DNA of 64,000 nt from Takakia lepidozioides (lineage: Eukaryota; Plantae; Bryophyta): assembly GCA_030704615.1 (NCBI GenBank), contig CM060732.1, positions 58,032,001 to 58,096,000 on the forward strand, in the 5' to 3' direction. The notes beneath the pieces are model-generated. The model did not search any database and had not been told where the DNA came from. It saw only the letters and a program-made list of their open reading frames with translations. Position numbers and translations under genes: made by a program. The stretch's first letter is position 1. The number at the start of each line of letters is the position of its first letter. Below, piece after piece: positions 31,289 through 64,000 of the stretch.

Positions 31289-31650
31289 TAAATGGAAAAT
31301 GCGCTGTTGGCCTACCCATCAATACACTCAGGGATGCACGGTCACGGCCCTTATTACAATCTCCCCCAGACCCATTTTATGAGGGCTCCCACATAAAAGT
31401 GTCAGCATGCGGAACTAGGAGGCGGCATACAATTATATCCTTCCAAATTGAAGCCTTCAGGCCATGCCCTTAGAGGCCTCTAATAACCCATCCAAGTCAA
31501 GGCAGTTTCCAGCCCAACCTTTCACTCCAAAGGGCACTGTTATTTTTCCATCCTCCAAATTGAGGGGCAGGTTTATATCATATTGAAAAAATAAGCCCCC
31601 CAAGTTTGCGTGGGCCCTATCCATTAGAAGGTGGTCCAAGAATTTAAAAG

Positions 31651-32015
31651 GAAGATAATAGGAATAATGTAAGAACTTAATGCACACATGCAATTATGAC
31701 ATGTCAAATCTACCCCACCCTCTCTTGAGAGTGACATGGAACCGAGGGAGTGTCAACTCGAGTTGAGGTTACACGACGAGGTGTGTAACTCCACTTGGGG
31801 TTACATCGGGTTGCACGACGAGGTATGTATCTCCACTTGGGGTTACATCAGGTTACGCAATGGGGTGTGTAAGGCCACTCGGGGTGTGAACGTGTGTACT
31901 TAGTCGCACTCGGGTGAGGATTTGAGAGGCCCTGCCGGATGAGCCCAGGCTGCCGGCAAAAGTACCGTCAGATCACACACGTCCATTAAGTTCTTACATT
32001 ATTCCTATTATCTTC
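31651..32015. mobile_element. Non-autonomous miniature derivative of the large Mutator-like element
   Basis: Perfect 32-bp TIR GAAGATAATAGGAATAATGTAAGAACTTAATG, identical to the ends of 49237-63221; internal GGTTACA/GTGTAAC motifs; no matching 9-bp TSD found. Confidence 0.85.
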
Positions 32016-33064
32016 TTTAATTAATAGAGCAGCTAGCAGCGGGGTCCCAAATTTTGGCACGGATTATCAAAAAAAGGTGAAAGAGGTTTTTTTTTCCTCT
32101 CACTATTAAGGGGCCTGATTTTTATTTATTTTTGGATCCCAAAATCATTTTTTTTTTTGAAAGGGATCGAAGCCCTCGATATTTATTGATAATGGGGGAA
32201 AAAATAAAACCCCCATGGGGCCATAAAGCATACACACCAACATGGCCTGATTTGTGAGCCGTCGCTCCCATGTGTTTCCCTTTTCCAAAAAACAAAAAAC
32301 GAGGAGAGCAATGGAGCAGCCAATGGGGAGGGAGGCCAGTGGGTGTTGGAATGGGAATGTGAGGCCATTGTAGCGGAGAGCATGGAAAATAGGCAGTCGG
32401 CCCTTCTTTTACTATTTGACTCCTCCTGAAGGAAGCATAAATTATGGTGTCTCTTCGCCCTGAAGGGCTAGGAAGGTGGACACCTTTGTGGCACCAATCG
32501 GTGGATTGAACCCACAACCACTTCCGAGGTACAACGTGTTGGCTGTCCCATGAGGGAACATGTAAAGGAGGGCGAGGACAATGCTTCTTCCTCCTCAACC
32601 TTATTATTACTTATTACACATTTGGTGGCCTGTGCAATCATCTACAGTGAGGAACTCTGACCAACCTTCTGACACCTTCACACTGCTACTCGGTCGGAGG
32701 TTCTCGGCTGGAGGTTGTACGCCGGAGAGAGTAGCGTCCTTCTCCAGAGATTAGAGGTGGATCACTAGGCGGTTCTTTGGAGTCTTTGTTTTCCTCAAAG
32801 GTTTACGCTTACCTCAAGATTCTTGCAAGGGTGATATGTTGTTGGCGTGCGTGGCTCACAGAGTCTATGCACTCAGTCGCTCCTCGGACTCCCTGGACAG
32901 ACATCGCAGCTACAGACTTCGAGTGATCAATTTAAATCCAGCTCGTAAGAGGCTTCTTGAGAACTAGGACAGATCATATTTCAGAGCAGCTGTTGCGTGT
33001 GTGCATCTTTACTGCCCTCTTCCAGTGACGGATCTTGTTGTGCACTTGATGCATACAGGATAAT

Positions 33065-39135: not shown

Positions 39136-42100
39136 TCACCAGTACTCCCGACAAGAACAAACCCCATCTTCGAAATGGTGAAAGCGGTTGGCATCCCGCA
39201 CAACAATTGCTCGCCCAACAATCTTTGAAATGAACTTGGTGGCCGTGTGGCAGTCACCACACATCCCAAGGTTCTTCATGATGCGGAGAAGAAACCCGGG
39301 GGCTGTGCTGATTAGCCCAAAAGCAATGGCCAGTTTCTCACTGTGGTGGCAGGGAGAAAGTTCCTTCTGCTCCTCCACTTCAGGCAATAAAAAGCATGAG
39401 TCAGGCACATACCCTGCCTCCTTCATTTGTCCAGACAATCTCTCCAGCTCTGCATGGATTTCCTGTATATGTGGATGCACTTTGTCATCTACAACAAAGG
39501 TGTGCACCCTGTTGCCAATCTCAATGCAGCAGCGACCTGGCTCCTTTCTGACACCTCTGACCTTCATCATTATTCTCACCTTTGCAGTATCATCCCACCT
39601 GCCAGCTGCAGCATAGATGTTTGATAGCAACACATATGTCGTGGCGTCCGGTTCATCCCACTTGAGAATCGATGTCACCACACGTTCTGCCACCTCCACA
39701 TTGCCATGAATTCTACAGGCACTGAGCAAGGCCTTCCATACCATAGCATCCGGCTTTATTGGCATGTTGTTAATGAAGTCCTCTGCCTCATCCAATCGCC
39801 CTGCACGGCCAAGAAGGTCCACCATGCAACCAAAGTGCTCCACTGTAGGAGTAAGGCCATGATCTTCACTCAGGGAATCAAACAATTGTCTGCCTTCATC
39901 CAGTAGGCCAGCATGGCTACATGCAGAGAGAACAAATATGAAGGTGACACTATCGGGCTTCAAGCCTACCTTCTGCATGCTTTCAAATAATTGCAGGGCC
40001 TCCCTATGAGAACCATGCTGGGCATATCCTGCAATCATTGCACTCCATGACACCACATTTCGTTCAGACATATTGTCGAACACTCTTTTTGCATCCATGA
40101 TACTGCCGCATTTGGCATACATGTCCACAAGGGTCGTGTCCAAAAGAAGATCTGGTACAATTCCAGCTTTAATGATGTCAACATGGACCTCTTTGCCCTT
40201 TTCTAGGGCTCCCAAGCTGGCACACGCATTGCAAATGCAAATGAACGTGGACTGGTCGGGCTTCACCCCTTCCCGTATCATTTGCTCATAGGTCACCAAA
40301 GCCTCAATCCCACACCTGTGCTGGGCATATCCAGCAATCATTGCATTCCAGGACACCACATTTCGTTCAGCCATATTATCGAACACTCCTTTTGCATCTT
40401 TGATGCTCCCGCATTTGGCATACATGTTTACAAGGGCAGTGTCCAGAATCATATTTGGTACAATTCCAGCTTTCAAGATGTCAGCATTGACCTCTTTGCC
40501 CTTTTCCAGGTCGGCCAGGCTTGCACACGCATTGCAAATGCAGACAAACGTGACCTGGTTGGGCTTCACCCCTTCCCTCATCATTTGCTCATATGTCTCC
40601 AAAGCCTCCATCCCACTCCCATGCTGTGTATATCCTGCAATCATAGCACTCCATGAGACCACATCTCGTTCAGCCATGTTGTCAAACACTCCCTTTGCAT
40701 CCATGATGCTCCCGCATTTGGCATACATGTCAACTAGGGTACTGTCCAAGATGATATTTGGCACAATTCCAGCTTTCCTGATGTCACCATGGACCTCCTT
40801 GGCCTTTTCCAAGGCTTTGAGACTGGCACATGAATTGCAGACGCAAATGAATGTGACCTGGTCAGGCTTCACCCCTTCCCGTATCATTTGCTCATAGGTC
40901 TCTAAAACCTCCATCCCGCACCCATGCTGGGCATATCCTGTGATCATCGCATTCCATGACACCACATTTCGTTTAGCCATATTTCCAAACACTCCCTTTG
41001 CATCCTTGATGCTCCCACATTTGGCATACATGTCCACGAGGGTAGTGTCCAAGATGATATTCGGTACGATTCCAGCTTTCATGATGTCAACATGGACCTC
41101 TTTGCCCCTTTCTAGGTCTTCCAGGCTGGCGCAAGCATTGCTTATGCAAATGAAAGTGACCTGGTCAGGCGTCACCCCTTCCTGCATCATTTGCCTATAG
41201 GTCTCCAAGGCCTCTGTTCCGCACCCATGCTGGGCATATCCTCCGATCATCGCATTCCATGACACCACATTTCGTCCAACCATATTGTCGAACACTCTCT
41301 TTGCATCCTTGATGCTCCTGCATTTGGCATACATGTCTACGAGGGTAGTGTCCAGAATGACATCTGGTCCAATTCCAGCTTTCATGATGTCAGCATGGAC
41401 CTCTTTGCCCTTTTCCAGATCTGCCAGGCTGGCATACGCATTACAAACACCAATGAACGTGACCTGGTTGGGCTTCACCCCTTCCCGCATCATTTGCTCA
41501 TAGGTCTCCAAAGCTTCCATCCCGCACCCATGCTGGGCATACCCTGCAATCATCGCACTCCATGACACCACATTTCGTTCGACCATATTGTCAAATACTC
41601 CCTTTGCATCCTCTATACTCCCGCATTTGGCATACATGTCCACGAGGGCAGTGTCCAGGATGATATCTGGCACAATTCCAGCTTTCCTGATGTCAGCATG
41701 GACCTCTCTGCCCTTTTCCAGAGCTGACAGGCCGGCACACGCCTTGAGAATGCAAACAAATGTGACCTGGTTGGGCACCACCCCTTCCTGCAACATTTGC
41801 TCATAGGTCTCAAATGCATTCCTACCACACCCATGCTTGATATATCCTGCCATCATTATAGTCCATGAAAATGTATTTCGTTGAGGCATGTTGACAAACA
41901 CTTGGTGTGCATCCACAATGCTCCCACACTTGACATACATGTTGACAAGAGTATTGTGTAAAAACACACTTGGCCTATATCGACTTTTGATAATGTGGGC
42001 ATGAACCTCCTTTCCCACTGCTAGGCTTTTTATCTTGATGCACTTATGCAAAAGACAGACGTAGGTATCAGAGTCTACGGATGCTCTTCCCTGGTGCAGA

Positions 42101-42450
42101 ATGTGCAGAGCCTCTTCCAGTTGTCCTGACTCACATAGTGTCCTCACGAGCCCACAAGTTCCAAAGGAGACCTTGCGGACTTCCCCTCTTGGTCCTCTTT
42201 CAGAAGCAGTAGTCATGGTGGAGGTGTCTGATCCCATCAACTGTGCTGCTGCTGCTTCCAGTTGAACATCTACCCATGCAGGTTTCTTGTCGCTATCAAT
42301 CCACAGTGCCTCACTGGTACTCTTGTGCTTGAAATCTGGTCCTCTAGGATGGATCTGAACCCACTCCATGTTGCATCCTTCAGTTATCCCTGCCTTGACA
42401 ACAATAATGTATGGATCGTCTCCCTTGCTTCTAGTAGCTGACAATGACAA
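39136..42450 (-). CDS. PLS-class PPR protein with E1/E2 and DYW deaminase domain (organellar C-to-U editing factor); true start uncertain
   Basis: 1104-aa ORF with about 23 P/L/S motifs in 101-aa triplets, P2-L2-S2, PG box (KEPG), HSEKLA, CGDCH, terminal EYW. Confidence 0.95.
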   Translation of the reverse strand: MSLSATRSKGDDPYIIVVKAGITEGCNMEWVQIHPRGPDFKHKSTSEALWIDSDKKPAWVDVQLEAAAAQLMGSDTSTMTTASERGPRGEVRKVSFGTCGLVRTLCESGQLEEALHILHQGRASVDSDTYVCLLHKCIKIKSLAVGKEVHAHIIKSRYRPSVFLHNTLVNMYVKCGSIVDAHQVFVNMPQRNTFSWTIMMAGYIKHGCGRNAFETYEQMLQEGVVPNQVTFVCILKACAGLSALEKGREVHADIRKAGIVPDIILDTALVDMYAKCGSIEDAKGVFDNMVERNVVSWSAMIAGYAQHGCGMEALETYEQMMREGVKPNQVTFIGVCNAYASLADLEKGKEVHADIMKAGIGPDVILDTTLVDMYAKCRSIKDAKRVFDNMVGRNVVSWNAMIGGYAQHGCGTEALETYRQMMQEGVTPDQVTFICISNACASLEDLERGKEVHVDIMKAGIVPNIILDTTLVDMYAKCGSIKDAKGVFGNMAKRNVVSWNAMITGYAQHGCGMEVLETYEQMIREGVKPDQVTFICVCNSCASLKALEKAKEVHGDIRKAGIVPNIILDSTLVDMYAKCGSIMDAKGVFDNMAERDVVSWSAMIAGYTQHGSGMEALETYEQMMREGVKPNQVTFVCICNACASLADLEKGKEVNADILKAGIVPNMILDTALVNMYAKCGSIKDAKGVFDNMAERNVVSWNAMIAGYAQHRCGIEALVTYEQMIREGVKPDQSTFICICNACASLGALEKGKEVHVDIIKAGIVPDLLLDTTLVDMYAKCGSIMDAKRVFDNMSERNVVSWSAMIAGYAQHGSHREALQLFESMQKVGLKPDSVTFIFVLSACSHAGLLDEGRQLFDSLSEDHGLTPTVEHFGCMVDLLGRAGRLDEAEDFINNMPIKPDAMVWKALLSACRIHGNVEVAERVVTSILKWDEPDATTYVLLSNIYAAAGRWDDTAKVRIMMKVRGVRKEPGRCCIEIGNRVHTFVVDDKVHPHIQEIHAELERLSGQMKEAGYVPDSCFLLPEVEEQKELSPCHHSEKLAIAFGLISTAPGFLLRIMKNLGMCGDCHTATKFISKIVGRAIVVRDANRFHHFEDGVCSCREYW

Positions 42451-45680: not shown

Positions 45681-46895
45681 ATGGTGGGAGCCTCAGATGA
45701 CAGTAAGGCCAAAGTCAATGAGACCTGTGGACCAGACCAACAACTGATTGAGAGATTGTGGAACAAGTTGCCCGATGAGGTTATGGATTTGGTGCTGGCA
45801 TGGCTGCCTCTCTCTTCCTTCTTCCGCATGCATTGTGTGTGCAAGAAATGGGATAATGTGATCTCATTGCCCAGCTTTCTTGAGACATACTCTCGTGTTC
45901 CTTCTGGGAATGCATGTTTCCTTCACCTAATTAGGGTTAATGGAGTTTTAATGGCAGCCTTCCATGATCCCTCAGCCAATCGTTGGCAGCGGTTATCATT
46001 AGATTCCATCCCTGTTAATGCTTCCATTCATGGTGGAGCTGGGGGATTACTCTGTTGCCAGAGGGTAGAAAATGGATTGCTGGTGCTGTCCATTTCAAAT
46101 CCATTGACAAAGGCTTGGAGAGATTTGCCCCCCATGCCTCATCCGTATACGTCCACATGTTTTCTGAAAATGGTGGCCAACAAAGAGACAAATTCCTATA
46201 TGGTTATTCGGGTAGGCCAATTACAGCCACTTCCGCCCGTTCGAAACAATGGTCCTCGCATTGAACTGTGTACAGAAGTATATGAGTCTGCTCATAATAG
46301 TTGGAAATCTTTTGACAACACACCGACAGATCTTCGGTTCATCCAAGGATGTTCTGTGCACAACGGATCACTTCATTGTCGGACTTCCACCACCCGGAGG
46401 ATGATGGTGTACTACTTGAAGCAAAATGTCTGGACAGAGATCTTTGCTCGAAATCTTGACTACATTCTGGATTCAAAGATGGTGGACTGTGACGGCAAGC
46501 CTTTTTTAGTGACAAGGGTTTGGAAAGGTGGACTAATGGAAAGCATTGATATCTGGGGGCAGAAACAGAGACCTCTTTGTAATTATTCTGGAATTGAAGA
46601 GCCAGATGATAATAAGTCACAGCATGATCCCTCCCTTGAAAATGTGGAGTGGGAAGAGGTTGCCATTATGCCTCCCACTTTGTTCCAAGAGTGGAGCTCA
46701 AGTGCAGGCCTATTTTACCATGTCGGTGTTGGTGACTCTATTTACTCCACATGTCTGGCACGTGGGGCCAGCAAGCTTGTAACATACAGTGTACGCCAAA
46801 GGAGATAGCAATTAGTAGATGGCTGCCCTGTTAGCCAAAGCAATACTTATCTTGGGGGTTTTGAGTTCCGGCCAAGGCTGGATGCAGCTGTTTAG
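45681..46895 (+). CDS. F-box protein with kelch-like beta-propeller; in-frame TAG at 46806-46808 followed by 28 more conserved-looking codons
   Basis: LWNKLPDEVMDLVLAWLP..RMHCVCKKW F-box; GGLLC, NPLTKAWRDLPPM, EVYES..SW; after the TAG the frame reads QLVDGCP..GGFEFRPRLDAAV*, a typical family C-terminus. Confidence 0.85.
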
Positions 46896-48632: not shown

Positions 48633-49489
48633 TTCGATCGATATTCGTAGTTCACTATCAAATCATGCACACAACTTAATGATAGTCATGCTGATCATAT
48701 ACATAAAAAATGTGTAACCTGTACATATGTATCTGGCTGTAGCTTGCACCCAAGACGAAGTCAACAAGTGTGTGGACAGTGCAAAAGCTGCACAAACACT
48801 CTGGGCCAAGACTCCTTTGTGGAAGAGAGCAGAAGCACTTCAGAGGGCCACGGCAATGCTCAGAGACCAACAGGCGCCTATCGCAGATTGTCTTGTTAAA
48901 GAAGTTGCAAAGTGTCTAAAAGATGCAATTACGGAGGTGACGATGAACTTTGTTGAAAACCTTCTCGTTTTCCCTCATATAGATCTTCATTTTGGAGCAA
49001 ACCTCAACGTCGAAGAAAATAATAGTCTGTACAACCTCTCATTTTGGATTAATAGCGTCTTGAATGGACACACGTGAGGCCTGTGGACCCCGCCACGTCC
49101 AAACAGGGGTCCCACCATGGCCGGGTCCCCGCCCTAGGGTCTGCCGCTAGTTATCAGGGCAAACCAGATGCCTTATTCCGGACTTAGTATTTTTCAGAGA
49201 TTTTCTGAGTTTTCCATCTTCATCATACTTGTCATGGGAAGATAATAGGAATAATGTAAGAACTTAATGCAAGCGCGTCAGGACGGTCCAGCCCTGACAC
49301 CCGTACCGCCGGTTCTTCGCCTCCGGCAGACATCGAAAGGCAGCCGGCTGGGCTCAGTCAATCCCTCCCCACCCCCGCCCTCATCCCATCGGCGTCGTCG
49401 CCCCCAACGTCATCGTTCTGCGACACTAGTCCGCCGCTTCCAGCAGTCCGCCAGTTCCTTGTAACCCCCGCCCCGGGTTCAACCATCAC

Positions 49490-50285
49490 CCCCATGTAAC
49501 CCTCTGTAACTCCGCCGAGTGTAACCCACACCACCATGTAACCTCTGTAAAACCAAATAACCCATGACCCTCTGTAACCCTCACCACCATGTAACCCTCG
49601 TAACCCATGTAACCCTCTATAACACCGCAGAGTGTACCCCCACCCCTATGTAACCCTCACTACATGTAACCCTCTGTAACCCATGTAACCTCTATAACAC
49701 CGCAGAGTGTCACCCCACCCCTATGTAACCCTCACTACATGTAACCCTATGTAACACCCAGAGCAGAGTGTAACCCTCACGCCATGTAACCCTCTGTAAC
49801 CTTTGTAACCCATGTAATCCTCTGTGACCCTCTGTAACCCATGTAACCCGCTGTGGACCCTTGTAACCCTCACACCATTAACCTCTGTAACACCGTTTGA
49901 GTAGTAGAGTGTCACCCTCACCCATATGTAACCCTCACTCCATGTAACCCTCTCTGACCCTCTGTAACCCTCACCACCATGAACCCTCTGGAACCATGTA
50001 ACCCTCTGTGACCCTCTATATCCCTCACAGGTGTAACCCTTACACCATATAACCCTCTGTAAACACCACAGAGTGTCACCCTCGCCACCATGTAACCCTC
50101 CGTAACCCTCACAAACATCTGTGGACACCGCAGAGTGTCACCCTCATCCCATGTAACCCTCACAAACCCTCTGGGGCTCTGTAACCCATGTAACCCTCTG
50201 TAACACCGTAGAGTGTTGCCCTCACCCCTTATGTAACCCTCACTCCATGTAACCCTCTGTAACCCATGTAACCCTCTATGACCCT
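49490..50285 (+). repeat. Left subterminal minisatellite array (TGTAACCC core)
   Basis: Dozens of TGTAACCC(TC/A) units interspersed with ACACCGCAGAGTGTCACCC. Confidence 0.92.
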
Positions 50286-50444
50286 GCCAGATTTGACAAC
50301 ACCGCGTGCAAACAGTTATCGTCATTGCATAAGTAAGTCACTTATGAGGGTTGTATAACATTCCCAGCCCCCACTTCTTTCTGCTGGCCTAGCAAAGTCG
50401 TATATGGCGATAACCCTCCTCGCTTTTATGTTTTTTTTTTGCAG

Positions 50445-51472
50445 GTACCACTGCTGCTACGGCCCGATAGATAGGCGCACGGACCCGCCGATTGTGAAGA
50501 AGAAAGAAAAACCGATAGCAGCCTCCGATAATCAAAAACCAGTCAAGCGAATCAGACGTAAGGCAGCGGATTTCGGAGAGTCATACAAACGTGGGTGTAC
50601 GTGTAGCTTCAAAGTTGGCCAGTGTTTTCTAGATTCAGAGTTGGCAATCATCACATACTTCCAGAAACAGCATGTGGATGCAAAAGGAAAGCCATGTCAT
50701 GGTTCAGCTGACCCCTCTTCCCATTTCTCGCGATTCGTGCATGCCCCTCGTCTCAGCCAAGATATGAAACAGTGGATCGTCGATAGTCTTCGCAGTGGCC
50801 TATCTCCAGCTATAATTATGACACAACACACTCAACAGCTCCAGGAAGCTTGTGCGTCTCAGCCAGGCATGGAGTGGAGTCGCGATTGTTTCTTGTTCGA
50901 GTACGACGTGAGAAACATTGCCGACAAGCTTGCGATTGAGAGTTACAAAAAACATCCAGATGATGCAAAAAGTGTACGTATGTGGGTCGATAACAATCCT
51001 GAAAGCGTCTTCTTCTACCATGAAGAGACAGCGCCAGTGGCGGGTGATTTGAAGTTCGTAATTGGAATACAAACGGAGTGGCAAAAACAGAAAATGATCG
51101 ACCTGGGACACAACCGTGTGGTATCTTGCGATGCAACATTTGGGACCAATGAAAATAAGGTATTTGTGTCACGTTTTACCTTTCATTGCATTCTGGAATG
51201 TGAGTGCCACGCAACTGTTGCCAATATTATAACACTCACCTTATTCATTTTTGTACCATTGCGACATTGCAGTTCCCAATGTATACCATGATGGTGTTCA
51301 ACGAATGGCTCAACGGCATACATGTTGCTTATATTATATCAGCGAAAAACAAAACGACTGAGCTGAGCCCCTGGATGAAACGTCTTCGCGACCGACTTCT
51401 TCAGAGCAAACCAGATTGGAGGCCAAATGCTTTTGTTGTCGACGATGCAGACGCAGAAATCAATGCTATCAG
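50445..51472 (+). pseudogene. MULE transposase, N-terminal half (exons 50445-51159 and 51273-51472)
   Basis: YHCCYGP..KRGCTCSF..HVDAKGKPCHG DNA-binding region; FVIGIQTEWQ..SCDATFGTN (first D); FVVDDADAEINAIR (second D); GT-AG intron. Confidence 0.88.
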
Positions 51473-51619
51473 GTACACGGCTAGAAGTTACAATGTTCTG
51501 AGTCACACAGTAATTCACACTACAAGTTGCATGCACGAGGGGTTTCATGGATCGGGCTACACTGCTGCTAGTTACACTGAGAATCACAGTAAGAGTTAAA
51601 CTGCCACCGGTATCCGCAG

Positions 51620-51845
51620 TGTCACCCTGAGGTGCAGTGTAACCCTCCTTCCATGTTGCTCCTCTCTGCACAGTGTCACCCTCAGGTGCAGTGTAACCCT
51701 CCTTCCCTGTTGCTCCTCTCTGCACAGTGTCACCCTGAGGTGCAGTGTAACCCTCCTTCCCTGTTGCTCCTCTCTGCACAGTGTCACCCTCAGGTGCAGT
51801 GTAACCCTCGGTTTCAGGGCATCCTCCCCTTGCAGTGTCACCCTG
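51620..51845 (+). repeat. 54-bp minisatellite, about 4 copies, probably intronic
   Basis: GTGTCACCCT(G/C)AGGTGCAGTGTAACCCTCCTTCC(A/C)TGTTGCTCCTCTCTGCACA repeated in tandem. Confidence 0.88.
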
Positions 51846-51931
51846 CGCATCAATGGGACCCACGAAGGCTGGGTCATTCTGAGAGAGGTTGACCACATGA
51901 TCCTGACAAATACTTACATTGCTGCATCGAG

Positions 51932-54445
51932 GGTTCAACCCAACATCTCCAGATTCAAAGTCATACACAGACTTTGGGTCAAGCGGGTCCCTGATTCTTC
52001 GATTAAGACCTTCAAAAGAAATGACTGGGGCTGCGGACAAAAAGGTTCGCACTTGGGTGTTCCACCTTGATGTATCATCTTCAATATCAGTATCAGAATT
52101 CATGGGCAAATCCCGCGCTGACAATGCCGTGAGGGACATTGTCGTGGGTGACACACCATTGCCCGTGAACACTGTAACTTCCGTTGAGAGTGACATTGAC
52201 ATGGGTTACACCCCACAGCCAACCCACATGGCAGATGTCAGTGAGTGTAACACTGCCATGGATGACATTCCACTACCACTAGTCGTGGAAGGTGACACTC
52301 CTTTGCCACGGCCACTAGTCGCGACGGATGACGGTCTTCCGCTAGTCAACATGGTCTTGGAGGGTGCGGAGAAGGGCGACACAATCAAGGATGGCATTGA
52401 GGAGGTTGATGCAAAGAAGAGTGACATCGACATGGGTGACACGGGGAAGGGTGTCACCGAGGAGGTTGTCAGTTGGAAGGGTGACACAAAGCAGGGTCAC
52501 ACTGAGAAGCGTTTCACTGTGGAGAGTCACGAAGAGAAGGATGTTGCGGAGCATCTAGACACTGAGAAGAGTGACACTGCCAAGGGTGACACACATAAGA
52601 TTGTTACTCAGCAGAGTGACACTGGGAAGGAACCCGATGAGAAGGGTGACACTGCGAAGAGTGACACGGATAATGCGGCCAAAGAGAAGGGTGACACTGA
52701 GACCAGTGACACTGAGAAGGTAGCCGGAGAGAAGGGTGACACTAAGATGCGTGACTCTGAGGAGGTAGCTGAAGAGAAGGGTGACACTAAGAAGAGTGAC
52801 ACTGAGGAGGTAGCCGAAGAGATGGTGACATTGAGAAGGAAGCCGAAGAGAAGGGTGACACTGAGAATCGTGACACTGAGGAGGTAGCCGAACAGAACTA
52901 AGAAGCGTGACTCTAACAAGGGGTTTGAACAGAAGGGTGACACTGACAGGGGTAGCACCGAGGAGGTGAGTTGTGACACTTCTGCCCTTGGTCAATCACC
53001 TCCCCAGCACGTCTCAGACGAGGGAGTGCAGTCTTCAGCACTTGCAGCAAACTCAGAACAAGGCACCTCTGGCTCAGAAATTCCCCCTACCGGCAGCATT
53101 GTCAGGGTTGCAGAGAATCCCAGGAGGTCAAAACGGCCGCCTGCTCAAAGAAAGCAGTTGGCTGAACCCCCTAGCGCTGACAAAGAAGTATCTGTTCTTG
53201 TCGCACCCAAAAAACAACGAACCAAACCAAAAGGCAAAAGTGCAGGGGTCTCGGAGGTTGACGTTGTCCATCAGCAAGAGGTCCTTGCCAAGCACTTGCG
53301 GGAGCGTTCGAGGTACCTCATTGTACTTTGATCCTCTCTGATTTTGAATATTGATTATAACTCTTGTATGATGCATCGTAATGTTCGTAATGTGCGGTTT
53401 GTTGTGCAGACTAAAACAACGTTACTTGACAAAGTTCAGAATGGTGTCGGACCCTCCTGGAGCGCCCGAAGTGAAGTTTTATTATGGCGATGCCTTCCTG
53501 GCTTCTAGTCCGTTACAGTTTTACTTGGAAGAGACAGATTTTGAGCCGATGTATAAAATAAGAGCAACTGTCACAGATGCATTGCTCTCGGGTTACAACA
53601 AACTTCTGGAGGCCCAATTGTTTAAGGCTATCGCACCTGAGTTTGTCATCTGTGCTCCTTTCCAATGGCATGTCATGCGTACCAATGGTAACGATCTGCA
53701 GACGCTATTCGGGTTGGTGCAAGAATGGTACACTCAGGATGCCCGAGGGATGGTGTTCACAAAGAATCGAGATCTTGTGGACGTGGTTGTTATCCCTATT
53801 GTCTTTGAGTAAGTAATTTCAGCGTTGACTGAGCATGTTGGGTTACACTCCTCTATTCTAGACTGAGTTGCACTAGTGACTGCTGACTAGTTGTGTAACA
53901 CCGTTTAGAATTATAGTACAAAGGGTTACACTACTGGGTTACACCACAGCCGGGTTACACCACAATGGGTTTCATTGGAGATGTTTTTTTCTATTCTGAC
54001 GTAACGGCTTTGTTTGTGTTGCAGTGATCACTGGAGTGTTGTTGTTTTAGAGCGCCGAGGTCGGATAGTACATTTGGACTCCCATAAAACAATTGCTCGA
54101 CCCAAACTCATTGAAGGAATTTTGCGAAATTTTGCCATAGCGTTCTTTGATTTCATGCCTGGATCTGATGACTTCAGTTACGTCATGGAGAGGATGGAAT
54201 GGTTTGAGACCAGTGTCCCCCATCAACGGAGCTGTTGGGAGTGCGGCTATTATGCACTTTGTTTTGTGCAATTTTACTTGGAGTGGAAGTTCAATGTGAA
54301 AACCACAGAAGATCGAACCCGTCATAGGCGGGCGTTTACTGCAAGTTGGTTCAACGAGTCAACCATGATAGCTTCCCGTACTCATATGATTAGTTGGCTG
54401 TGTGACGAGATGGACAAAGACTTGGTCAGATGGCCAAAGAAATAA
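51932..54445 (+). pseudogene. 3' half of the passenger gene: acidic KGDT/KSDT repeat region plus Ulp1-like (C48) SUMO protease domain; exons ~51932-53312 (disrupted near 52820-52890), 53410-53808, 54025-54445
   Basis: Spliced VVIPIVFD-DHWSVVVL..IVHLDS..PHQRSCWECGYY gives the H, D, Q, C catalytic pattern of C48 peptidases; splice phases compatible. Confidence 0.8.
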
Positions 54446-55823
54446 ATAGCGTCTCTTGATACATTTTTGCTTCTATGTGGTTTGTTCGTAACACTTCACA
54501 GTTTGGGTTTCATGCAATGGGCTTACACACCTTATAAGGTTACATGAAGTGGAATCATAGACAAGTACTTGGGTACACCTTTGGGCCCTGGGGCAATGGG
54601 CTTACACTCTGTGGGTTCACACATAAGTGATGGGTTACACCATGTCGGGTCTCACAACGTGGGGTTACACTTATGGGTTACATACAATGGGCCTAGGGTT
54701 ACATGGTTGGGCCTTCCTGGCTATGTCAGGGTCACGTTGCTGAAACAGTATACTTTTGTGGCATGTAACCCCACCTCGACTATGCGCATTTGTTTTATTT
54801 TTTATTTTTTTCGCACTGAAGTGTTTGTGCACTGAAGTTCTCAGATTTATACTACATGGGGTTACATACATGAGGTCTATGTACAATGGGTTACATACGA
54901 TGGGGTCACAATAGTGTGGGGGTAACATCTGGTCGGGCTACATACTTCTTGGAGTTACAACACTCTGGGTTACACTCACTCAAGAGGGTTACACAGTTCT
55001 AAGTTACACTGTGCTCAATGAAAGTGGGCAGGGTTGCCTATACAAGGGCTACATGTCGTGGGGATACATAAGATGGGGTGATGTAGCATCGGGGTTTATA
55101 GCGTGCACCCCAAATTGTACAATGGGTTACATGCGATGGGGTGACATCAATGGGGGTTACATGTGGTCGGGATACATACTTCTTGGGGTTACACAACAAC
55201 AAGTTACACTCCGGAGGGCTACACTGGTCCATAACATAGGTTGAACGGAATGATTATCTATCTCATGGATTACACGTCCATGGGTTACACACAAATTGGG
55301 TTACACATACAGGGGTTACACATACAGGGGTTAGTGTTGGTGACTAAAGGTGCTCGACTTCAGCATCTTCCCACTCTATATTGAAGGGTCATGTAACCCT
55401 GGCAGACTAACCCAGACCCTGTAGTCACATTGTAGTCATCGACTTATAATTCTCAGAGTTACACCACTGACATCAATATTCTATGGGGTTACATATTGGG
55501 TTACACTGTTGATAGTTACATTGCAGTTACACTTGGAGTTACACCACAATGAGTTACACTGAAGAGGTTCACACTCATCTGTGTTACACTGTGTGGAGTA
55601 CCACAGATGCGAGTTACACTAAGTAGAGCTATGTTACGTTATGAAACCCCAGACGGTGTAACCCTGCGGTGTGTCACCCCAGCCCATGGGTGTCCCATTG
55701 AGTGGGTTACATAGGTTGAATGTGGATGGAATGGCAAAGTGAATAACAACCCATGAACAGACATGTACTTCATATTAAACTTGGTGATCACAAAATAAGT
55801 GTCATTGCCAATGGACTCAATGG

Positions 55824-56970
55824 TCACTTACTACGGAACCGGTCTACAAAATCTACTTTCCTGGCAAGGGACATGTTGTTTCCATCATCATTTTTTATGA
55901 ATGGAACTGCTTAAAGAGGGTGCAACAGACCTTTGTCGATTCTAACTTGTAAAGTGGACAGCCTCCCACGAACACAATGAAGCTCGGCAAGCAGATGTTT
56001 GCGCATTGTTTAACTCTCATTGCCAAGAAGCGACAGGGACTTCAGCTCAGATTCAATTGATGAAACATCCGATGGCTCCTGCCGACCACGCTGGGATGAT
56101 GCTGAGCACTCCGTAGGCTCTGCTAGATTCACAACTTCCTCCTCTGCATCAATATCTGGAAGTTCCGATTTCATCAACATGTGAAGACCTCCATGAATGG
56201 TCCCGAGCTTTGTGCCACAGAGCTTCACAATAAGCCCTTCCTTCAGATTTGGCTTCATCAATTGAAGAACGCGGATTTGATGTTTGCACAAGTTACCCTT
56301 CAAAGCCCATGGACAATCTCAACAAGCCCAGGTGGTTGCAGGTGCATAGATTGTGTAGCTTCGACCGGCCGTTTGAACACTATCCACAATCGCCGGATGA
56401 CCAGGAATAGTGGGCAAATGAACATTGACATCAGGGATCTCCCTTGCAGTCCAAACAACATTACTGATAAATTCCTCCTGTCATACATTCCTTTTGAAGC
56501 CTTTCGATTTCAAGTTATCTCTATACCAATAGTGGGTTAGAACAGGACCCACGAGTTCGCTGATCAGCCAATCGATTCTCCTGCCATCAAGCCTTTGCTT
56601 TCCCGAGCGTAAACGAGCCTTCAAATTTCCGTGCCAAGATTCAATTGCGGCATTAGTATCCTGACTTGCATGGGGAATATAACGAGCCCCCGTGATCCAC
56701 ATGCTCAGTTTTGGGACCCATTCCATTCCGATGTAATGTAGGAAGTCACGCGCAAGCGGATAGGAATAATTCAAATCTTCCAGTCGCTCCAGCGCCCACT
56801 CTTCTTGGGTGACTCCCACACATGTGTTAATGCCGTACATTACGTCGCCAAGCTGTTTCAAAACAGCATTGCGAGTGTATGGATCGGGCATCTTACGCCA
56901 CGAATGTTTCAGCCAAGCGCGGCGAACATGCCAAAGGCATAGAAATATCGCTACGTCCCCAAACGATTCC
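55824..56970 (-). pseudogene. MULE transposase, C-terminal half on the opposite strand, with in-frame stops
   Basis: ESFGDVAIFLCLWHV (CxxH), TNAAIESWHGNLK (catalytic E), SWIM finger C*DC..NLCKHQ; stops at 56481, 56319, 56010 and ~55911 all in one frame. Confidence 0.88.
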
Positions 56971-57601
56971 CTGCACGCACACACATCAAATGCCACCCAA
57001 TCCATCAGTGTAACTCTTGTCAGTGTAACTCTTATCAGAGGAACTCTTCGCAGTGTAACTCGTAGAAGTGTAACTCTTCAAAGTGTCACTCTTAGTAGTG
57101 TGACTCATGTAATCCCTGGTCATGTAACTATCAGTGAACCTCACAGCAGTGTAACCCAACACATATAACCCCTCACAGCGCTGTAACGCAATCCATGTTA
57201 CACCGTGTAACTCTCAGAGCGACCCAACCCATACAACCCTCTGCGATGCTCCCAGTGTAACTCACAGGCTATAGCAGTGCAACCTAATCCATGCAGGACT
57301 GTGGATGACACGCCGTGTAACTCCCAGTGTAACTCGCAGTGTAACCCTCTGTCTACCTCATAGCTGTGTAACCCTCAGTCTAACTCACAGCAGTGTAACC
57401 CTCCGTCCAACTCAAGGCAGTATAACCATCTGTCTAACTGATAATGTAACCCTTAGTGTAACAGACAGCACTGCAACCCAATCCATGTAACCCCTCAAGC
57501 AACTGACAGTGTAACTCCAAGTGTTATAGGCAGCAATGCACCCCCTCGTGTAACTGCTGCTAAGTTCACCCCTAAGTGCAGCTGGGTTGAGTACAATTCA
57601 C

Positions 57602-60210
57602 CAACCTGCGACAAAGATACAACGGCAGATTGGAATGATGTCCTCGTCATGTACATCGTCGCTCTGCGGGGCGGAAATTGGCCCATCGCTCGTCTGCGTG
57701 CCCCCTACGCCCCCTGTATCGCATTGTGGAGGGGCCCATACACAACTTTGTGAAGCTCACGTTGAGCCTCAAAAAGGTTTTTGAATGCATTGGCGACTTG
57801 ATTGGTCATGAGCTCGGACTCATCTGCATCGGGGAAAAGACAAAGGTTTTTAGTCGTGGAACGAGGTTTTTGAAAGTGCAAGGGTTACACTATGTAAAGG
57901 GTTACATTGACTAGGACAAGACAGTGGTTTGGATTACACGATGTGGGTTACACCACCCTGTTAGAGACAGTAGTTTGCAATGGGTTACACTACCATGGGT
58001 TACACTACTGAGATTACACAACGAGAGGGTAACAAATCTAGGGTAACACAGCGAGGGGTACCATTAGGGATACACTGATTACAGGGTTACATACTCCGAG
58101 GGTTACACTGATTACAGGGTTACACACAGCAAGGGTTACACTGAGTACAAGGTTCCACATAGCGAGGGTTACACACAACGAGGGTTACACTGAGTTACAA
58201 GGTTCCACATAGCGAGGGTTACAATGATTACAAGATTACACACAAAGGGGTTACACGACGAGAGGGGTGACAGTGGATGGAGTAACACTTACAGAGATAC
58301 CAAGGCACTACAGACCCAAGGTCTCTCATATACTGGATGCCCAAACGCGCATTGAAGTCCATTTATGTTGGTGATTCGCTGAAGAGGCCACAACACCAAA
58401 GCTGGATAAACGATTCTCTCTGTTGGATCGCAAAGTGATGGGCGGCGCGACGACGGCTTGCCTTGCAAAACTGTATAGCTCCGTTGATCTTAATTGACCG
58501 GTCACCCCACTCTTCTGTACTCAAACTCAATCTTAAGTCTTCGAGCTCAAAATCCAAGGTCGCAATTCCGTCACCAGGTTGTGCAAAGTACATCAGACTA
58601 AAACCGTAATACTCATCGACCAGGTCCTTCACCTTTGAGGCCGTAAGAGCACTTTCCAAAAGTTCGGTCGTGAACCCCAACCTGGGATGCGTTTGGGAAA
58701 CTGACCTGCCATGATTTCTTACATCGTTGTGGGCCAGAATTCTCAAAAGGAGTGGTGGCGGTCCAATGTGCGGTTTGGTGAGATTCTCCATTTGACTGAT
58801 CAATCCTTCGGCAAAACCACGAGTGAATTCCAACGGATCTGGAACAACCAAACCTTTGATTCCATCTACAGTAATAGTGATGACAAGAGGATTTGAAGTT
58901 CTGGCATCGTCAAGGTCGGTATTGCCAACAGCTAGTTCGTCCATCGTGTCATCATCATGTGAGGCTTGGCTCTCTCGATAGACTCGTGTAAGTCTCCCAC
59001 CTTTTTTCTTTTTCTGCTTTGGCATGTCAGGATGCCCAATGCTCTCTAAATACTCCTTCACCCGATTCAATTCCTCTATCATTAACGGACCATGATCCGG
59101 CTGGGCAGTAAACGCCTTGTGGGCAGCAACAACACTGTCCATATCATCGCTTCTAAGATGATATCGAGCTCCCTGTGCAATACAGCGTGAGGGGTTACAC
59201 CAGAGAAAAGGGTTACAGCACGAGGGGTTACACATGAAAATGGGTTACAAACAAGATGAGCTACACGGGGTTACACAGAGGTGGGTTACACACCATAGGG
59301 GTTTTTAAAAGGGGTCCTCTGTAGGTGGGTTACACTCTGGGTTACACGCCACAGGAGAGACAGGGGGGGTAACACAAGGGGTTACATGGATAGAAAACAG
59401 CCCAAAATTTGAAAAACAGAGAAATGGCAGGGAATCCAACTTGATTGTCTGTCGATAGAACCCAACTTGATTTTGCAGCTGTCGCATAGACTGCGCCCTC
59501 GCCTCGCGCAACAAATTCTTGGAATGCCGGCCAAAACCCCTTCTCATTGACATTCGAAAATGGGAACTGAGGAATAAGGCCATGCGGTAGCAGAAGGATT
59601 GAGCCTGGAGTTCGCTTTCGCAAGATGAACCTTGAGCTCTGGTTTCCCCGGTTTCCAATGTTGATTTTCTTTGCAATAGGGACAGGTAGAGGCAGGCTCA
59701 ATCGCCGCTTGTCTCTCTCATTAGAAACCTGCCGAATAGAAGGACCAGGGACAAAAACAGCAGGAGCACCAGAAGATGGAACCTCTGTAGCAGAAATAGC
59801 CAAAGAAGGTACAACAGCAGGCACTTCAATAGGATCTGCAATCTCACCCAAAGCCACCCTATTTTGCAGAATCCATGCATGATATGCATCAACAGAAGAA
59901 GCTGGAACAGAATTCATCACATTTTCAACAGCCATGGCATGCTTGAGCTCCGCATCAGGAAACGGTTTTGTTCCTTTCGGTCTGGCCATACATGCGGCCG
60001 TTCCATCGACAATATGCCGATTCAATCTGCTCTTATCTACCTTTACTGCCCCACAATAAGGACATTTGAACTTAGGCCGGCCCTTTGCTCCCTCCACCTT
60101 GGCCTCTCTACACCTGGTGTGGCAGTACGCAATCATTGTAGCATGCTCATGCTCAGTGTACCAGAAGCGAACTCGTTCGCCATCCCTTTTCAAGTGATCA
60201 AATAGTAGCC
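57602..60210 (-). pseudogene. 5' half of the passenger gene with a zinc-finger-like motif; exons ~60210-59441, 59172-58293, 57823-57602
   Basis: FKCPYCGAVKVDKSRLNRH(x7)C; basic NLS-like PKQKKKKGG; GT-AG introns filled with GTAACCC repeats and in compatible phases; premature stops at 58363 and near 57700; first exon boundary uncertain. Confidence 0.68.
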
Positions 60211-61462
60211 TCTCCAGGGAACAAATAACAATCAGCCATGACAAAAGAAAAAGCTGACAGAAGAGAAGAGAAGAGCAAGAGCAAGAAAAGACAAGACAAG
60301 AAAAGACCAAGACCAAGAGAATTCCGAAGAACGCACAACGGGGAGCACGCACAGCAAAGAGTGCAGGAAGAATATGAAAGGCTGCGAGAAGGGGAAAACT
60401 GAACAATGATCAAAGAACGAAGAACGAAGCTAGCTAGATGTCACCCGTAAGGCACGTCGGTTCATTAAAATTTGGCGGCTTGCAATCAATTATATCCGCA
60501 CTGACTCACACGTGTATGAGTTGCAATCCCGGTGTCACCCGGAATAGCGGAGTGTAACCCGTAACCCTACACTTGTGAGCGCGACAAACCGGCCGTTACC
60601 CGCATGCCAGGCACGTCGAGTGTAACCCTCCGTCAGGTACCCACATATGATGTAACCCTTCGTCACAACTCATGTACCCCTAGTCTATGTGACTCCCGAA
60701 CACAACATCGATGTAACCCTGTCATATCAAACCATTAGTATGCAACCTCCAGGTAAACATGGTCAATGTAACGCCCCACCCATGTAACCCTAGCCTATGT
60801 GGCTCCGCAAGCGCAACATCCACGTAACCCATCAAACATGTCAACCCCATCTAAACCTCCATTACTAAACCGTCTACCAAGCCAGCATGTATTGAGAAAG
60901 AAAACACCGTGTAACCCCCTGTGTGTAACCATAGCACACGTGAGGTAGTCATATAAACCATCAGACATGTAACCGGTTGACAGTGCTTGCAAAACACGCA
61001 TGATTCGATACGTATTGCATCCATAATAGCGATGAGTAGGCTGCCCCGGCTGGTGTGTGAACAAAAGATACACAAGAAGAGAGTGAATGGGCACCCCGTC
61101 AAATGAGCGGCTGCTTGCATGGCTAGACCGAAAGAAACAAAACCCTTTCCTAATGCGGATCTTAGGTTTACCATAGCCATCGGGGACGGTGACAAAACAA
61201 GAAGAATGACATTGAGAAAGAAAAAGAATAGAGATAACCGTATCAATCTTAGAGAAAACCGTAGTAATAGATTTGACGGATCGCTGCGCGGAAAGCGTTG
61301 TCTTGTATGTTGCTGGGATGACGATACTGAACTGAATGAACTACAAATCTTTCGCATTGATGTGTGAAGCCGATTGGGCGCCATGGGAATTGCAGAAAGC
61401 TGATGCCCCAAAGCAAAAAAACGAGCGAGCTAGGAATCTGAAAAACGGATGGAGAGAGCAAA

Positions 61463-61486
61463 TTAGGGTTTTGGCCTCTATTTAAA
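61463..61486 (-). promoter_or_regulatory. Candidate inward-facing promoter: TATA-like TTTAAATA followed by telo-box AAACCCTAA
   Basis: Minus strand reads GGTTTAAATAGAGGCCAAAACCCTAATTTGCTCTCTCC just inside the right array, upstream of the passenger gene. Confidence 0.45.
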
Positions 61487-61534
61487 CCTCCATTCGGCCA
61501 TCAGATAGTTTACACGTGTATGATGTACACGAAG

Positions 61535-62965
61535 CGGTGTTACAGAGGGTTACATGGGTTACAGAGGGTTACATGGTGGTGAGGGTTACAGAGGGTCAGA
61601 GAGGGTTACATGGAGTGAGGGTTACATAGGGGTGAGGGTGACACTCTGCGGTGTTACAGAGGGTTACATGGTGGTGAGGGTTACAAAGGGTCACAGAGGG
61701 TTACATGGGTTATAGAGGGTTACATGGAGTGAGGGTTACATAAGGGGTGAGGGCGACACTCTGCGGTGTTACAGAGGGTTACATAGGTTACAGAGCCACA
61801 GAGGGTTTGTGAGGGTTACATGGAATGAGGGTAACACTCTACGGTGTTACAGAGGATTACATGGTGGTGAGGGTTACAAAGGATCACAGAGGGTTACATG
61901 GAGTGAGGGTTACATAAGGGGTGAGGGCGACACTCTGCGGTGTTACAGAGGGTTACATGGGTTACAGAGCCACAGAGGGTTTGTGAGGGTTACATGGAGT
62001 GAGGGTCACATGGTGGCGAGGGTGACACTCTGCGGTGTTACAGAGAGTTACATGGTGGTAAGGGTTACACCTGGTGAGGGATATAGAGGGTCACAGAGGG
62101 TTACATGGGTTACAGAGGGTTACATGGTGGTGAGGGTTACAGAGGGTCAGAGAGGGTTACATGGAATGAGGGTTACATAGGGATAAGGGTGACACTCTGC
62201 GGTGTTACAGAGGGTTACATGGGTTACAGAGGGTTACATGGAGTGAGGGTTACATAAGGGGTGAGGGCGACATTCTGCGGTGTTACAGAGGGTTACATGG
62301 GTTACAAAGCCACAAAGGGTTTGTGAGGGTTACATGGAGTGAGGGTTACATGGTGACGAGGGTGACACTCTGCGGTGTTATAGAGGGTTACATGGTGGTG
62401 AGGGTTACAAAGGGTCACAGAGGGTTACATGGGTTACAGAGCCACAGAGGGTTTGTGAGGGTTACATGGAGTGAGGGTTACATGGGATGAGGGTGACACT
62501 CTGCGGTGCTACAGAGGGTTAGAGAGGGTTACATGGTGGTGAGGGTTACAGAGGGTTACAGAGGGTTACATACGGGTGAGGGTGACACTCTGCGGTGTTA
62601 CAGAGGGTTACATGGTGGTGAGGGTTACAAAGGGTCACAGAGGGTTACATGGGTTACAGAGGGTCACAGAGGATTACATGGGTTACAAAGGGTTACAGAG
62701 GGTTACATGGAGTGAGGGTTACACTCTGCGGTGTTACATAGGGTTATATGGGTTACAGAGGATTACATAGGGTTACATGGGTTGCAAAGTGTTACAGAGG
62801 GTTACATAGGGGGTGGGGGTGACACTCTGCGGTGTTATAGAGGGTTACATGGGTTACAGAGGGTTACATGGTGGTGAGGGTTACAGAGGGTCATGGGGTT
62901 ATATGGGTTACAGAGGGTTACATGGTGGTGTGGGTTACACTCGGCGGAGTTACAGAGGGTTACAT
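61535..62965 (-). repeat. Right subterminal minisatellite array (GGGTTACA on the plus strand), inverted relative to the left array and longer
   Basis: GAGGGTTACA(T/G) units with GGTGACACTCTGCGGTGTTACA spacers and higher-order repeats. Confidence 0.92.
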
Positions 62966-64000
62966 GGGGGTGATGGTTGAACCCGGGGCGGGGATTACAG
63001 GAAACTAGCGGACTGCTGGAAGCGGCGGACTGGTGTCGCAGAACGACAACGCAGGGGCGACGACGCCGATGGGATGAGGGCGGGGGTGGGGAGGGATTGA
63101 CCGAGCCCAGCCGGCTGCCTTTCAATGTCTGCCGGAGGCGAAGAACCGGCGGTATGGGTGTCAGGGCTGGACCGTCCTGACGCGCTTGCATTAAGTTCTT
63201 ACATTATTCCTATTATCTTCCCTTGTCATGCAAGGTTTGAAACCACAACTAGCAGGACTGCACTACGATACCTATCACTTTCTTCTCAGCCTTCAAACTT
63301 TTTTGATTTATTCTATATTTCGACATGGAATTGAGTATGCACCTAAGGAGAGGCCCTCCCCTAGGTCTGCGGGTCTGCCAGTGGGGCATGAGGAGACCCT
63401 TCAAGCTGCAGACCATCCGTGCAGACCCATGGGCCGTGGGGTGGGGGTCACCCTCTCCTTTTTGCGGGCCCCACCATGTGTGGGCCCGCAGAGCATTCAA
63501 GACGGTATTAATCTAAAATGAGATTTGTCTGTACACACAGCTTGAGACTATGTACTTCTAAGACACATGTGATTAGTTATCCATCGACATTCTTTTGGAA
63601 AACCATGGCTGAGGGATCATCGCGTTTGACGTCATCAGCTTCTTTCCCGAATTGTGTCCATTTTGCAGCACTCATATTTTGCTTCATGCACGGGCATACC
63701 CTGTCGTCGAGCAGTAATTTCAACAGTGAGAGCCTGCTATGTCAATTTTGGTCTCTTCTCCTTAGTTACTGGATTACCACCATGTCACACCATGTCGCAG
63801 TTGCGAGGTCGAGTGTCATGATTTAGATAAGAAGTGGACTGCTAACGTCGTGACTATGGTGTCCGTGGCGTTCAGGTAGTGCGTTCAGCTATCTTATATC
63901 TTACGCCGCAGAGGAGGGAATCAGAATTTTGTCACAAGGGAAATTCATAGTTCCTGACTGCTTTCCAGGAAATGAGAGAAATAAGTATTGTTTTGCATCC

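What the first reader, a model, noticed from the sequence alone, without database searches (positions are those of the whole stretch)
51473..57601. One ~6-kb inversion splits both element genes inside introns; flipping it restores both
Seen: transposase N-half is on + and ends ..AI-AG|gt (51472); the C-half is on - and begins ag|G-GAA (56970), joining in phase as AIR-ESFGDVAIFLCLWH. The passenger 5' half on - ends G|gtgaat (57602, phase 1) and its Ulp1 half on + starts at phase-1 acceptors (51932 or 51953). In the present orientation the cross-splices are out of phase, so both genes are off. Candidate breakpoints: a CTGC microhomology at 51601-51604 / 57578-57581, where motif polarity switches, or a 31-bp inverted pair with 5 mismatches at 51537-51567 / 57466-57496. 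Inference: most simply a one-off repeat-mediated inversion, but the layout is what an invertible ON/OFF cassette, or trans-splicing of convergent half-genes, would look like.
Basis: partly seen in the sequence, partly recalled or inferred. Interest (0 to 1): 0.8.

Follow-up and report, generated by a model that had tools for sequence, protein, structure and literature searches.

The report
Inversion scar in a dead transposon
A 14-kb Mutator-type jumping gene of a land plant has had its middle ~6 kb flipped, cutting its transposase gene in two. That gene also carries four premature stop codons, so this is an ordinary scar in a dead copy, not a genetic switch.

Summary
The inversion is real. The element is a Mutator-like transposon at 49237-63221 with a perfect 9-bp target duplication. 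Its transposase N-half lies on + and ends at 51472. The C-half lies on - and starts at 56970. Fifteen full-length homologues match both halves in their own N-to-C order, 13 of them with no residues skipped at the junction. The split falls in an intron whose position and phase are conserved in an annotated homologue.

"Flipping restores both" fails. The flipped transposase C-half has four in-frame premature stops. One of them replaces the first Cys of the SWIM zinc finger.

The "split passenger gene" is not established. The zinc-finger part reads as a complete two-exon, 501-codon gene with its own stop at 58363. The proposed donor at 57602 lies in a stretch open in two frames. The Ulp1-side ORF is itself interrupted at 52885-52887.

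The proposed breakpoint signatures are weak. The CTGC/GCAG pair is one of 72 such pairs. The 26/31 inverted pair is only slightly above the motif background. The element encodes no recombinase.

Verdict: a one-off two-break inversion in a decayed copy. No sister copy could be fetched, so exact breakpoints and timing remain open. Earlier unchecked notes of this scan report similar internal inversions in other transposon copies of this genome.

The parts
49228..49236 (.). Left copy of the 9-bp target-site duplication (CTTGTCATG). The right copy is at 63222-63230.
   Evidence: Read directly from the flanks. Identical 9/9.
49237..50300 (+). Left terminal inverted repeat plus sub-terminal TGTAACCC arrays ('+' polarity).
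   Evidence: Inverted repeat arms 49230-49404 / 63054-63228 are 97% complementary. Tandem arrays. Polarity map.
50444..51159 (+). Transposase exon with the first catalytic Asp region. It ends AAG|gtattt, phase 0.
   Evidence: tblastn with full-length homologues, E down to 5e-47. Sequence.
51273..51472 (+). Transposase exon with the second Asp (..VVDDADAEINAI). It ends AG|gt, phase 2.
   Evidence: The same intron position and phase occur in homologue locus L001.
51473..51931 (.). Left breakpoint zone. It holds 4 degenerate '-' motifs (51487-51571), then 9 '+' motifs in a 54-bp tandem array (51617-51845).
   Evidence: The exact breakpoint cannot be fixed without an uninverted copy.
51932..52884 (+). 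Low-complexity ORF of motif-derived GDT repeats upstream of the Ulp1 domain. First ATG at 52021. It is closed by TAG at 52885-87, inside a 63-nt stretch out of register with the repeat.
   Evidence: Coding status unverified. The - strand is open here too.
52888..54445 (+). Ulp1-like (C48) protease part. Exons 52888-53311, 53410-53808 and 54025-54445, with canonical GT-AG introns in matching phase. The catalytic His, Asp, Gln and Cys are present.
   Evidence: Splice sites. Pfam PF02902 E 0.0011, 19.3 bits against a cut-off of 20.7. Alignment to SENP8, PDB 1xt9.
54446..55823 (.). Tail-to-tail spacer between the Ulp1 gene and the transposase C-half, filled with '-' polarity motif arrays.
55824..56970 (-). 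Transposase C-half: CLWH motif, catalytic Glu region, SWIM finger and conserved C-terminal tail. It carries four in-frame premature stops: TGA 56483-81, TGA 56321-19, TAA 56012-10, TAA 55913-11.
56971..57601 (.). Right breakpoint zone. 27 of 29 motif hits have '+' polarity (57009-57549). The zone could extend to about 57780, or to 58362 if the zinc-finger gene ends at its own stop.
57602..57663 (-). It is open in two frames. In one frame it ends with TGA at 57600-57598. Exon status uncertain.
58363..60136 (-). Zinc-finger gene readable as complete. Exon 1 is 60136-59441 (C2H2-like finger at 60070-59990). The intron is 59440-59173, full of TGTAACCC. Exon 2 is 59172-58363 and ends in TAA. 501 codons, phase 0/0, GT-AG.
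61534..63221 (-). Right terminal inverted repeat plus sub-terminal arrays ('-' polarity on the + strand).

Best explanation
This is one copy of a roughly 14-kb Mutator-like transposon of a land plant. A block was cut out at two non-coding points and rejoined backwards. The block carries the transposase 3' half, the tail-to-tail spacer and the Ulp1-type protease gene.

The left break lies in the conserved phase-2 intron inside the MULE domain, or up to about 550 bp downstream of that intron's donor. The right break lies in non-coding DNA between the transposase acceptor (56970) and the zinc-finger gene.

The most likely mechanism is two double-strand breaks, or a replication template switch, in motif-array-rich DNA, repaired by end joining. 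Site-specific or long-homology recombination is unlikely.

The event is a scar with no function. The copy is a pseudogene: the flipped transposase half carries four premature stop codons, so neither orientation encodes an active transposase.

Shown: the arrangement, the conserved intron and the stops. Inferred: the repair mechanism, the breakpoints and the timing.
For: All 15 full-length homologues match the two oppositely oriented halves in order. In 13 of them no residues are skipped at the junction. The intron position and phase are conserved in L001.

The tail-to-tail pairing of transposase 3' end and Ulp1 gene is kept inside the flipped block. A single inversion therefore explains everything.

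Nothing is duplicated: the self-comparison finds each coding part once. At the transposase junction nothing is lost at protein level.

The perfect 9-bp TSD and the TIRs show one element, not two.

Four in-frame stops lie in homologue-aligned sequence.

No recombinase was found among the element's ORFs. Only weak, motif-driven inverted similarity is found at the edges.
Against: No uninverted sister copy could be fetched. The family's ancestral gene order therefore rests on distant homologues (about 30-40% identity) and on unchecked notes of this scan.

The breakpoints are not resolved. Two restorations remove equally many polarity switches (own count).

Assembly error cannot be tested without reads.

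The order of inversion and stop mutations is unknown.
Confidence: 0.75

Rival explanations
1. The inversion is older than this insertion. An already inverted, non-autonomous derivative was mobilised in trans by intact relatives, so a sub-family of copies shares these junctions.
For: A perfect TSD and matching termini show that the whole 14-kb unit inserted as one piece. A 367-bp derivative with the same termini lies in the same window, which suggests trans-mobilisation of defective copies in this family. Four stops in about 1.1 kb suggest long decay.
Against: No second copy with these junctions is available. The self-search of the window finds none. The dating is too coarse to order the events.
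Confidence: 0.2
2. Assembly artefact: the middle 6 kb was placed in the wrong orientation.
For: The junction zones are rich in short repeats.
Against: The inverted similarity at the edges is far too short and imperfect (26/31, or 85 bp at about 73%) to confuse a long-read assembler. Unchecked notes of this scan list many kb-scale inversions in transposons of this genome.
Confidence: 0.06
3. Ectopic recombination or gene conversion between two copies lying head to head produced the same layout without an intramolecular inversion.
For: It is topologically equivalent. A note of this scan reports head-to-head copies of the family elsewhere (unchecked).
Against: It needs two exchanges in exactly complementary positions. 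It leaves one clean TSD-flanked element, which a single inversion explains more simply.
Confidence: 0.07
4. Programmed invertible ON/OFF cassette, or trans-splicing of the two half-genes.
For: The layout alone: the halves rejoin in phase on flipping.
Against: Rejoining in phase is automatic for a break inside an intron. There is no recombinase and there are no defined sites. Either route gives a product with four premature stops, including the loss of a SWIM Cys. Direct L/R similarity, which could pair half-introns, is only 19/20 nt of the common motif.
Confidence: 0.02

Closest known systems
Rearranged, defective derivatives of Mutator-family elements (internally deleted or rearranged MuDR copies in maize)
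   Same: A TIR- and TSD-bounded Mutator-type element whose transposase gene is disrupted by an internal structural change and by point mutations. It could move only with transposase supplied in trans.
   Different: The change here is a simple inversion of about 5-6 kb with nothing lost at the transposase junction, not a deletion. The host is a bryophyte-like plant, and the element also carries zinc-finger and Ulp1 genes.
Mu killer, an inverted duplication of mudrA plus TIRA that silences MuDR (abstract of PMC3440606, seen)
   Same: An internal rearrangement of a Mutator element places transposase sequence in antisense orientation relative to a promoter.
   Different: Mu killer is an inverted duplication that gives a hairpin RNA. 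Here nothing is duplicated, so no intramolecular hairpin of coding sequence can form.
Ulp1-carrying MULEs (Kaonashi/KI-MULEs) and VANDAL elements of Arabidopsis (own knowledge; the terms occur in PMC4948706 and PMC6117577)
   Same: A Mutator-like element that carries a C48/Ulp1-like protease gene and a further accessory gene beside the transposase.
   Different: The family is only distantly related. The C48 match is below Pfam's threshold. The element is saturated with a TGTAACCC motif.
Inversions made by alternative transposition of Ac/Ds (abstract of bioRxiv 10.1101/2020.01.07.897926, seen)
   Same: A kb-scale inversion associated with a cut-and-paste element.
   Different: Those inversions have an element terminus at a breakpoint. 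Here both breakpoints are internal, and no TIR terminus lies near them.
Site-specific invertible switches (Hin, Gin, Fim; FLP of the yeast 2-micron plasmid) (own knowledge)
   Same: A DNA segment whose orientation decides whether coding parts are joined.
   Different: There is no recombinase gene, there are no defined inverted sites, and the genes are dead in either orientation.

Membership tests
Mutator-like element (MULE) | Long terminal inverted repeats | tested here: met
   Arms 49230-49404 / 63054-63228 are 97% complementary. About 1 kb of arrays is alignable at 84%.
Mutator-like element (MULE) | Target-site duplication of 9-11 bp | tested here: met
   CTTGTCATG on both sides, 9/9.
Mutator-like element (MULE) | MULE-domain (PF10551) DDE transposase | tested here: inconclusive
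   The separate exon pieces do not reach Pfam thresholds. They do match, in order, homologues that pass: P0029 scores 44.1 bits and P0008 29.1 bits against a cut-off of 27.6. The joined model was deliberately not searched.
Mutator-like element (MULE) | SWIM zinc finger (CxC...CxH) after the catalytic domain | tested here: inconclusive
   The motif region is present (PF04434, E 0.015). The first Cys codon is TGA in this copy.
Ulp1-carrying MULE (KI-MULE / VANDAL-like) | Peptidase C48 domain with the catalytic His, Asp and Cys | tested here: inconclusive
   PF02902 scores 19.3 bits, below the 20.7 cut-off. His, Asp, Gln and Cys align with SENP8 at E 0.09.
Programmed invertible DNA switch | A recombinase encoded in or beside the cassette | tested here: not met
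   The element's ORFs give only transposase, zinc-finger and C48 signals.
Programmed invertible DNA switch | Defined inverted recombination sites at both edges | tested here: not met
   The best match is 26/31, against 19-24 for other motif blocks and a best of 20 for shuffles. The left arm pairs with at least five places in the right zone.
Programmed invertible DNA switch | The ON orientation gives an intact product | tested here: not met
   Four premature stops in the flipped transposase half. The Ulp1-side ORF is interrupted at 52885-87.
Programmed invertible DNA switch | Both orientations present in cells or individuals | not testable with these tools
   No reads and no second haplotype are available.
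Trans-spliced split gene | Mature RNA that joins the separately transcribed halves | not testable with these tools
   No RNA data. The product would be truncated anyway.
Mu killer-type silencer | Inverted duplication of transposase sequence able to form a hairpin | tested here: not met
   Each coding part occurs once. The only internal duplicate is a 117-bp zinc-finger fragment.

The most novel reading that the evidence does not exclude
The family may be inversion-prone. Oppositely oriented TGTAACCC arrays in the non-coding DNA of its convergent genes could make independent flips recur in several copies. An unchecked note of this scan reports a 3.7-kb inversion breaking the same genes in another copy. 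Flipped copies, read through from their promoters, would make antisense RNA to the transposase of intact copies. That RNA could seed silencing of those copies, a Mu killer-like effect without any duplication.
Probability: 0.08. Interest if true: 0.55.

Novelty: new member of a known kind. Interest (0 to 1): 0.15.

Why it matters
It matters little on its own. It is a cleanly documented example of how a large DNA transposon copy decays by inversion plus nonsense mutations.

It also corrects the annotation of this copy. The transposase is a split pseudogene, while the zinc-finger gene looks intact.

It would matter more if a survey of all copies showed that inversions between the two convergent genes recur. 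That would tie the element's polarised motif arrays to structural instability, or to the birth of antisense-producing copies.

Tried and rejected
SISTER COPIES. I could not fetch any.
- The protein word search with the N-terminal transposase exon found only relatives of 45% identity or less.
- The same search with the middle exon of the zinc-finger gene and with the Ulp1 catalytic exon found nothing.
- Exact look-ups of two host genes of the window, an F-box gene and a PPR-DYW gene, were not on record.
- The notes search by sequence was blank.
- The ESM Atlas gave no usable hit for the zinc-finger gene's second exon.
- Contigs of transposase homologues carried no Ulp1 or zinc-finger neighbour (L001), returned no DNA (P0029), or were not examined for one (L002).

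MOTIF POLARITY. I tried to use it to fix the breakpoints and rejected it as decisive.

TRANSPOSASE-MEDIATED INVERSION. I rejected this because no TIR terminus lies near either breakpoint.

LONG-HOMOLOGY RECOMBINATION. I rejected this because no long, similar inverted repeat flanks the block.

JOINED SPLICED MODELS. All searches were exon by exon, by reference.

Full report
CONTEXT
The window is nuclear DNA of a land plant.
- Positions 2-28 kb hold several Ty3/Gypsy chromovirus copies on the - strand.
- 39136-42450 is a single-exon PPR-DYW gene.
- 45681-46805 is an F-box-like ORF.
Earlier notes of this scan guess a moss, perhaps Takakia. I did not test that.

THE ELEMENT
The finding lies inside one Mutator-like element at 49237-63221.
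- The terminal arms 49230-49404 and 63054-63228 are 97% complementary.
- The element is flanked by a perfect 9-bp duplication, CTTGTCATG.
- Its non-coding DNA is packed with the word TGTAACCC and variants, in blocks of alternating strand polarity.

TRANSPOSASE SPLIT: CONFIRMED
- Exon 50444-51159 (+) ends AAG|gt.
- Exon 51273-51472 (+) ends AG|gt in phase 2.
- On the - strand an acceptor, ag|G, opens an exon at 56970.

A full HMMER scan with the first exon gave 495 relatives, several of them full length at 680-1050 aa. I ran tblastn with fifteen of these against the window. Every one places its N-terminal third on + and the following part on -, in its own order. In 13 of the 15 no residues are skipped at the junction. 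The other two skip 45-60 residues, and they lack the exon-2 match.

The alignments read straight across the junction. For example, P0029 has ...VDDAEQEIAALR then VVF..LCLWH where the window has ...VDDADAEINAIR then ESF..LCLWH.

The break falls inside the MULE domain of the homologues: PF10551 covers residues 242-336 in P0029, and the junction is near residue 321. It separates the two catalytic Asp regions from the Glu region and the SWIM finger.

In locus L001, whose called gene encodes P0008, an intron of 117 nt sits at the same codon in the same phase (AG|gt ... ag|G). So the break lies in an old, conserved intron. Rejoining in phase after a flip is then automatic and is not a further coincidence.

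"FLIPPING RESTORES BOTH" FAILS FOR THE TRANSPOSASE
Read in the frame set by the acceptor, the - strand half has in-frame stops at four places before the likely natural stop at 55826-55824:
- TGA at 56483-56481
- TGA at 56321-56319
- TAA at 56012-56010
- TAA at 55913-55911

All four lie inside stretches that align with homologues.
- The first stop sits between two conserved blocks and cannot be spliced out. The nearest possible acceptor is 9 nt away.
- The second replaces the first Cys of the SWIM CxC motif. The window reads WAC*DC where the homologues read WACCTC or WACCDC.
- The last two precede a C-terminal tail motif (DDG.N.SL.R..DF) shared with three homologues.

The copy is therefore a pseudogene whatever the orientation.

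The Ulp1-like part on + is a real, formerly spliced gene piece.
- Exons 52888-53311, 53410-53808 and 54025-54445 join through GT-AG introns in matching phase.
- The last exon has the His, Asp, Gln and Cys of C48 proteases. The Pfam score is 19.3 bits, just under the cut-off, and the exon aligns with SENP8.

Upstream of it, the long + ORF 51907-52884 is built from motif-derived GDT repeats.
- It is open on the - strand as well.
- It ends in TAG at 52885-87, inside a 63-nt stretch that is out of register with the repeat frame.
- The proposed acceptors at 51932 and 51953 are just AGs in phase with that ORF.

On the other side, the zinc-finger part reads as a complete gene.
- It starts at ATG 60136.
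- Exon 1 runs to 59441 (CAG|gt).
- A 268-nt intron is full of TGTAACCC.
- Exon 2 runs 59172-58363 and ends in TAA. The gene has 501 codons in phase 0/0.

That stretch is open in two frames. In the second frame it ends with TGA at 57600-57598, and the cross-splice into the transposase acceptor would be in phase, not out of phase.

So the inversion certainly turns the Ulp1 gene round relative to the zinc-finger gene. Whether it splits a fused gene is open. I put a fused gene at about one half. The scan's earlier notes describe sister copies both as a fusion and as two genes (unchecked).

BREAKPOINTS
- The left break lies between 51473 and the first true Ulp1-side exon.
- The right break lies between 56971 and, at most, 58362.
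- The CTGC/GCAG pair is one of 8 x 9 = 72 such pairs in the two zones.
- The 26/31 inverted pair is the best ungapped match of the left zone to any motif block. Other blocks give 19-24, and shuffles give a best of 20.
- With gaps it extends to 85 bp at about 73%.
- The same left arm also pairs with at least five other places in the right zone.

Polarity switches sharply between 51571 and 51620. It would also turn the 85-bp inverted pair into neighbouring direct repeats of one array, which is a point in its favour. However, a second restoration, with breaks near 51900 and 56990, removes just as many polarity switches. Only an uninverted sister copy can decide.

MECHANISM
- No recombinase is encoded in the element.
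- No TIR terminus lies near the breaks.
- There is no long, similar inverted repeat.
- Nothing is duplicated.
- At the transposase junction nothing is lost at protein level.

The simplest account is two breaks, or a template switch, in array-rich non-coding DNA, followed by end joining in reverse order. Non-coding DNA makes up roughly 45% of the element's interior by my own estimate, so two non-coding breakpoints need no special explanation.

WHAT I COULD NOT DO
- No sister copy of the family was reachable.
- The family's canonical order therefore rests on the homologues, on the tail-to-tail transposase/Ulp1 pairing preserved inside the flipped block, and on unchecked notes.
- Reads and RNA were not available.

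RELATION TO EARLIER NOTES
Unchecked first-reader notes report other cases in the same genome:
- a 3.7-kb inversion breaking the transposase and the zinc-finger/Ulp1 gene in another copy;
- similar kb-scale inversions in other MULEs and retrotransposons.

If these hold, small inversions are common scars in this genome. The different sizes argue against a fixed-site switch. They leave a small chance that the family is structurally inversion-prone, which is the novel case scored above.

VERDICT
This is a real inversion that splits the transposase exactly as described. It sits in a dead copy, it has no sign of being programmed, and the second "split gene" is not established. Low interest.

Noticed in passing
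window 31650-32016: A 367-bp element with the same 20-nt termini as the large MULE (20/20 and 19/20) and a few motif copies inside. It is probably a miniature non-autonomous derivative of the same family. The flanking 9-mers are AT-rich but not identical.
   Followed up: partly
window 61065-61181 (+), beside a '+' polarity motif block at 60500-61000: A fragment of the zinc-finger exon in inverted orientation: 39 aa at 56% identity, and 55 nt at 85% to 59949-60003. It lies just inside the right TIR arrays and points to a second, smaller rearrangement or the remnant of another zinc-finger gene.
   Followed up: partly
window 58363-60136 (-): The zinc-finger gene of this otherwise dead element reads as an intact two-exon ORF of 501 codons with canonical splice sites. 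Its second exon has no detectable relatives in the searches run.
   Followed up: partly
window 51617-51845: A 54-bp unit repeated 3.6 times at 97% identity. It combines a TGTCACCC and a TGTAACCC motif, is much younger-looking than the surrounding arrays, and lies right at the left breakpoint zone.
   Followed up: no
window 2000-28000 (-): A cluster of at least three Ty3/Gypsy chromovirus copies (RT, RNase H, integrase and chromodomain ORFs). It accounts for the GC-rich, strongly skewed first 28 kb.
   Followed up: partly
window 39136-42450 (-): A single-exon PPR gene of about 1,080-1,100 codons with E, E+ and DYW deaminase domains. This is the organellar RNA-editing factor type and fits an early-diverging land plant.
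   Followed up: no
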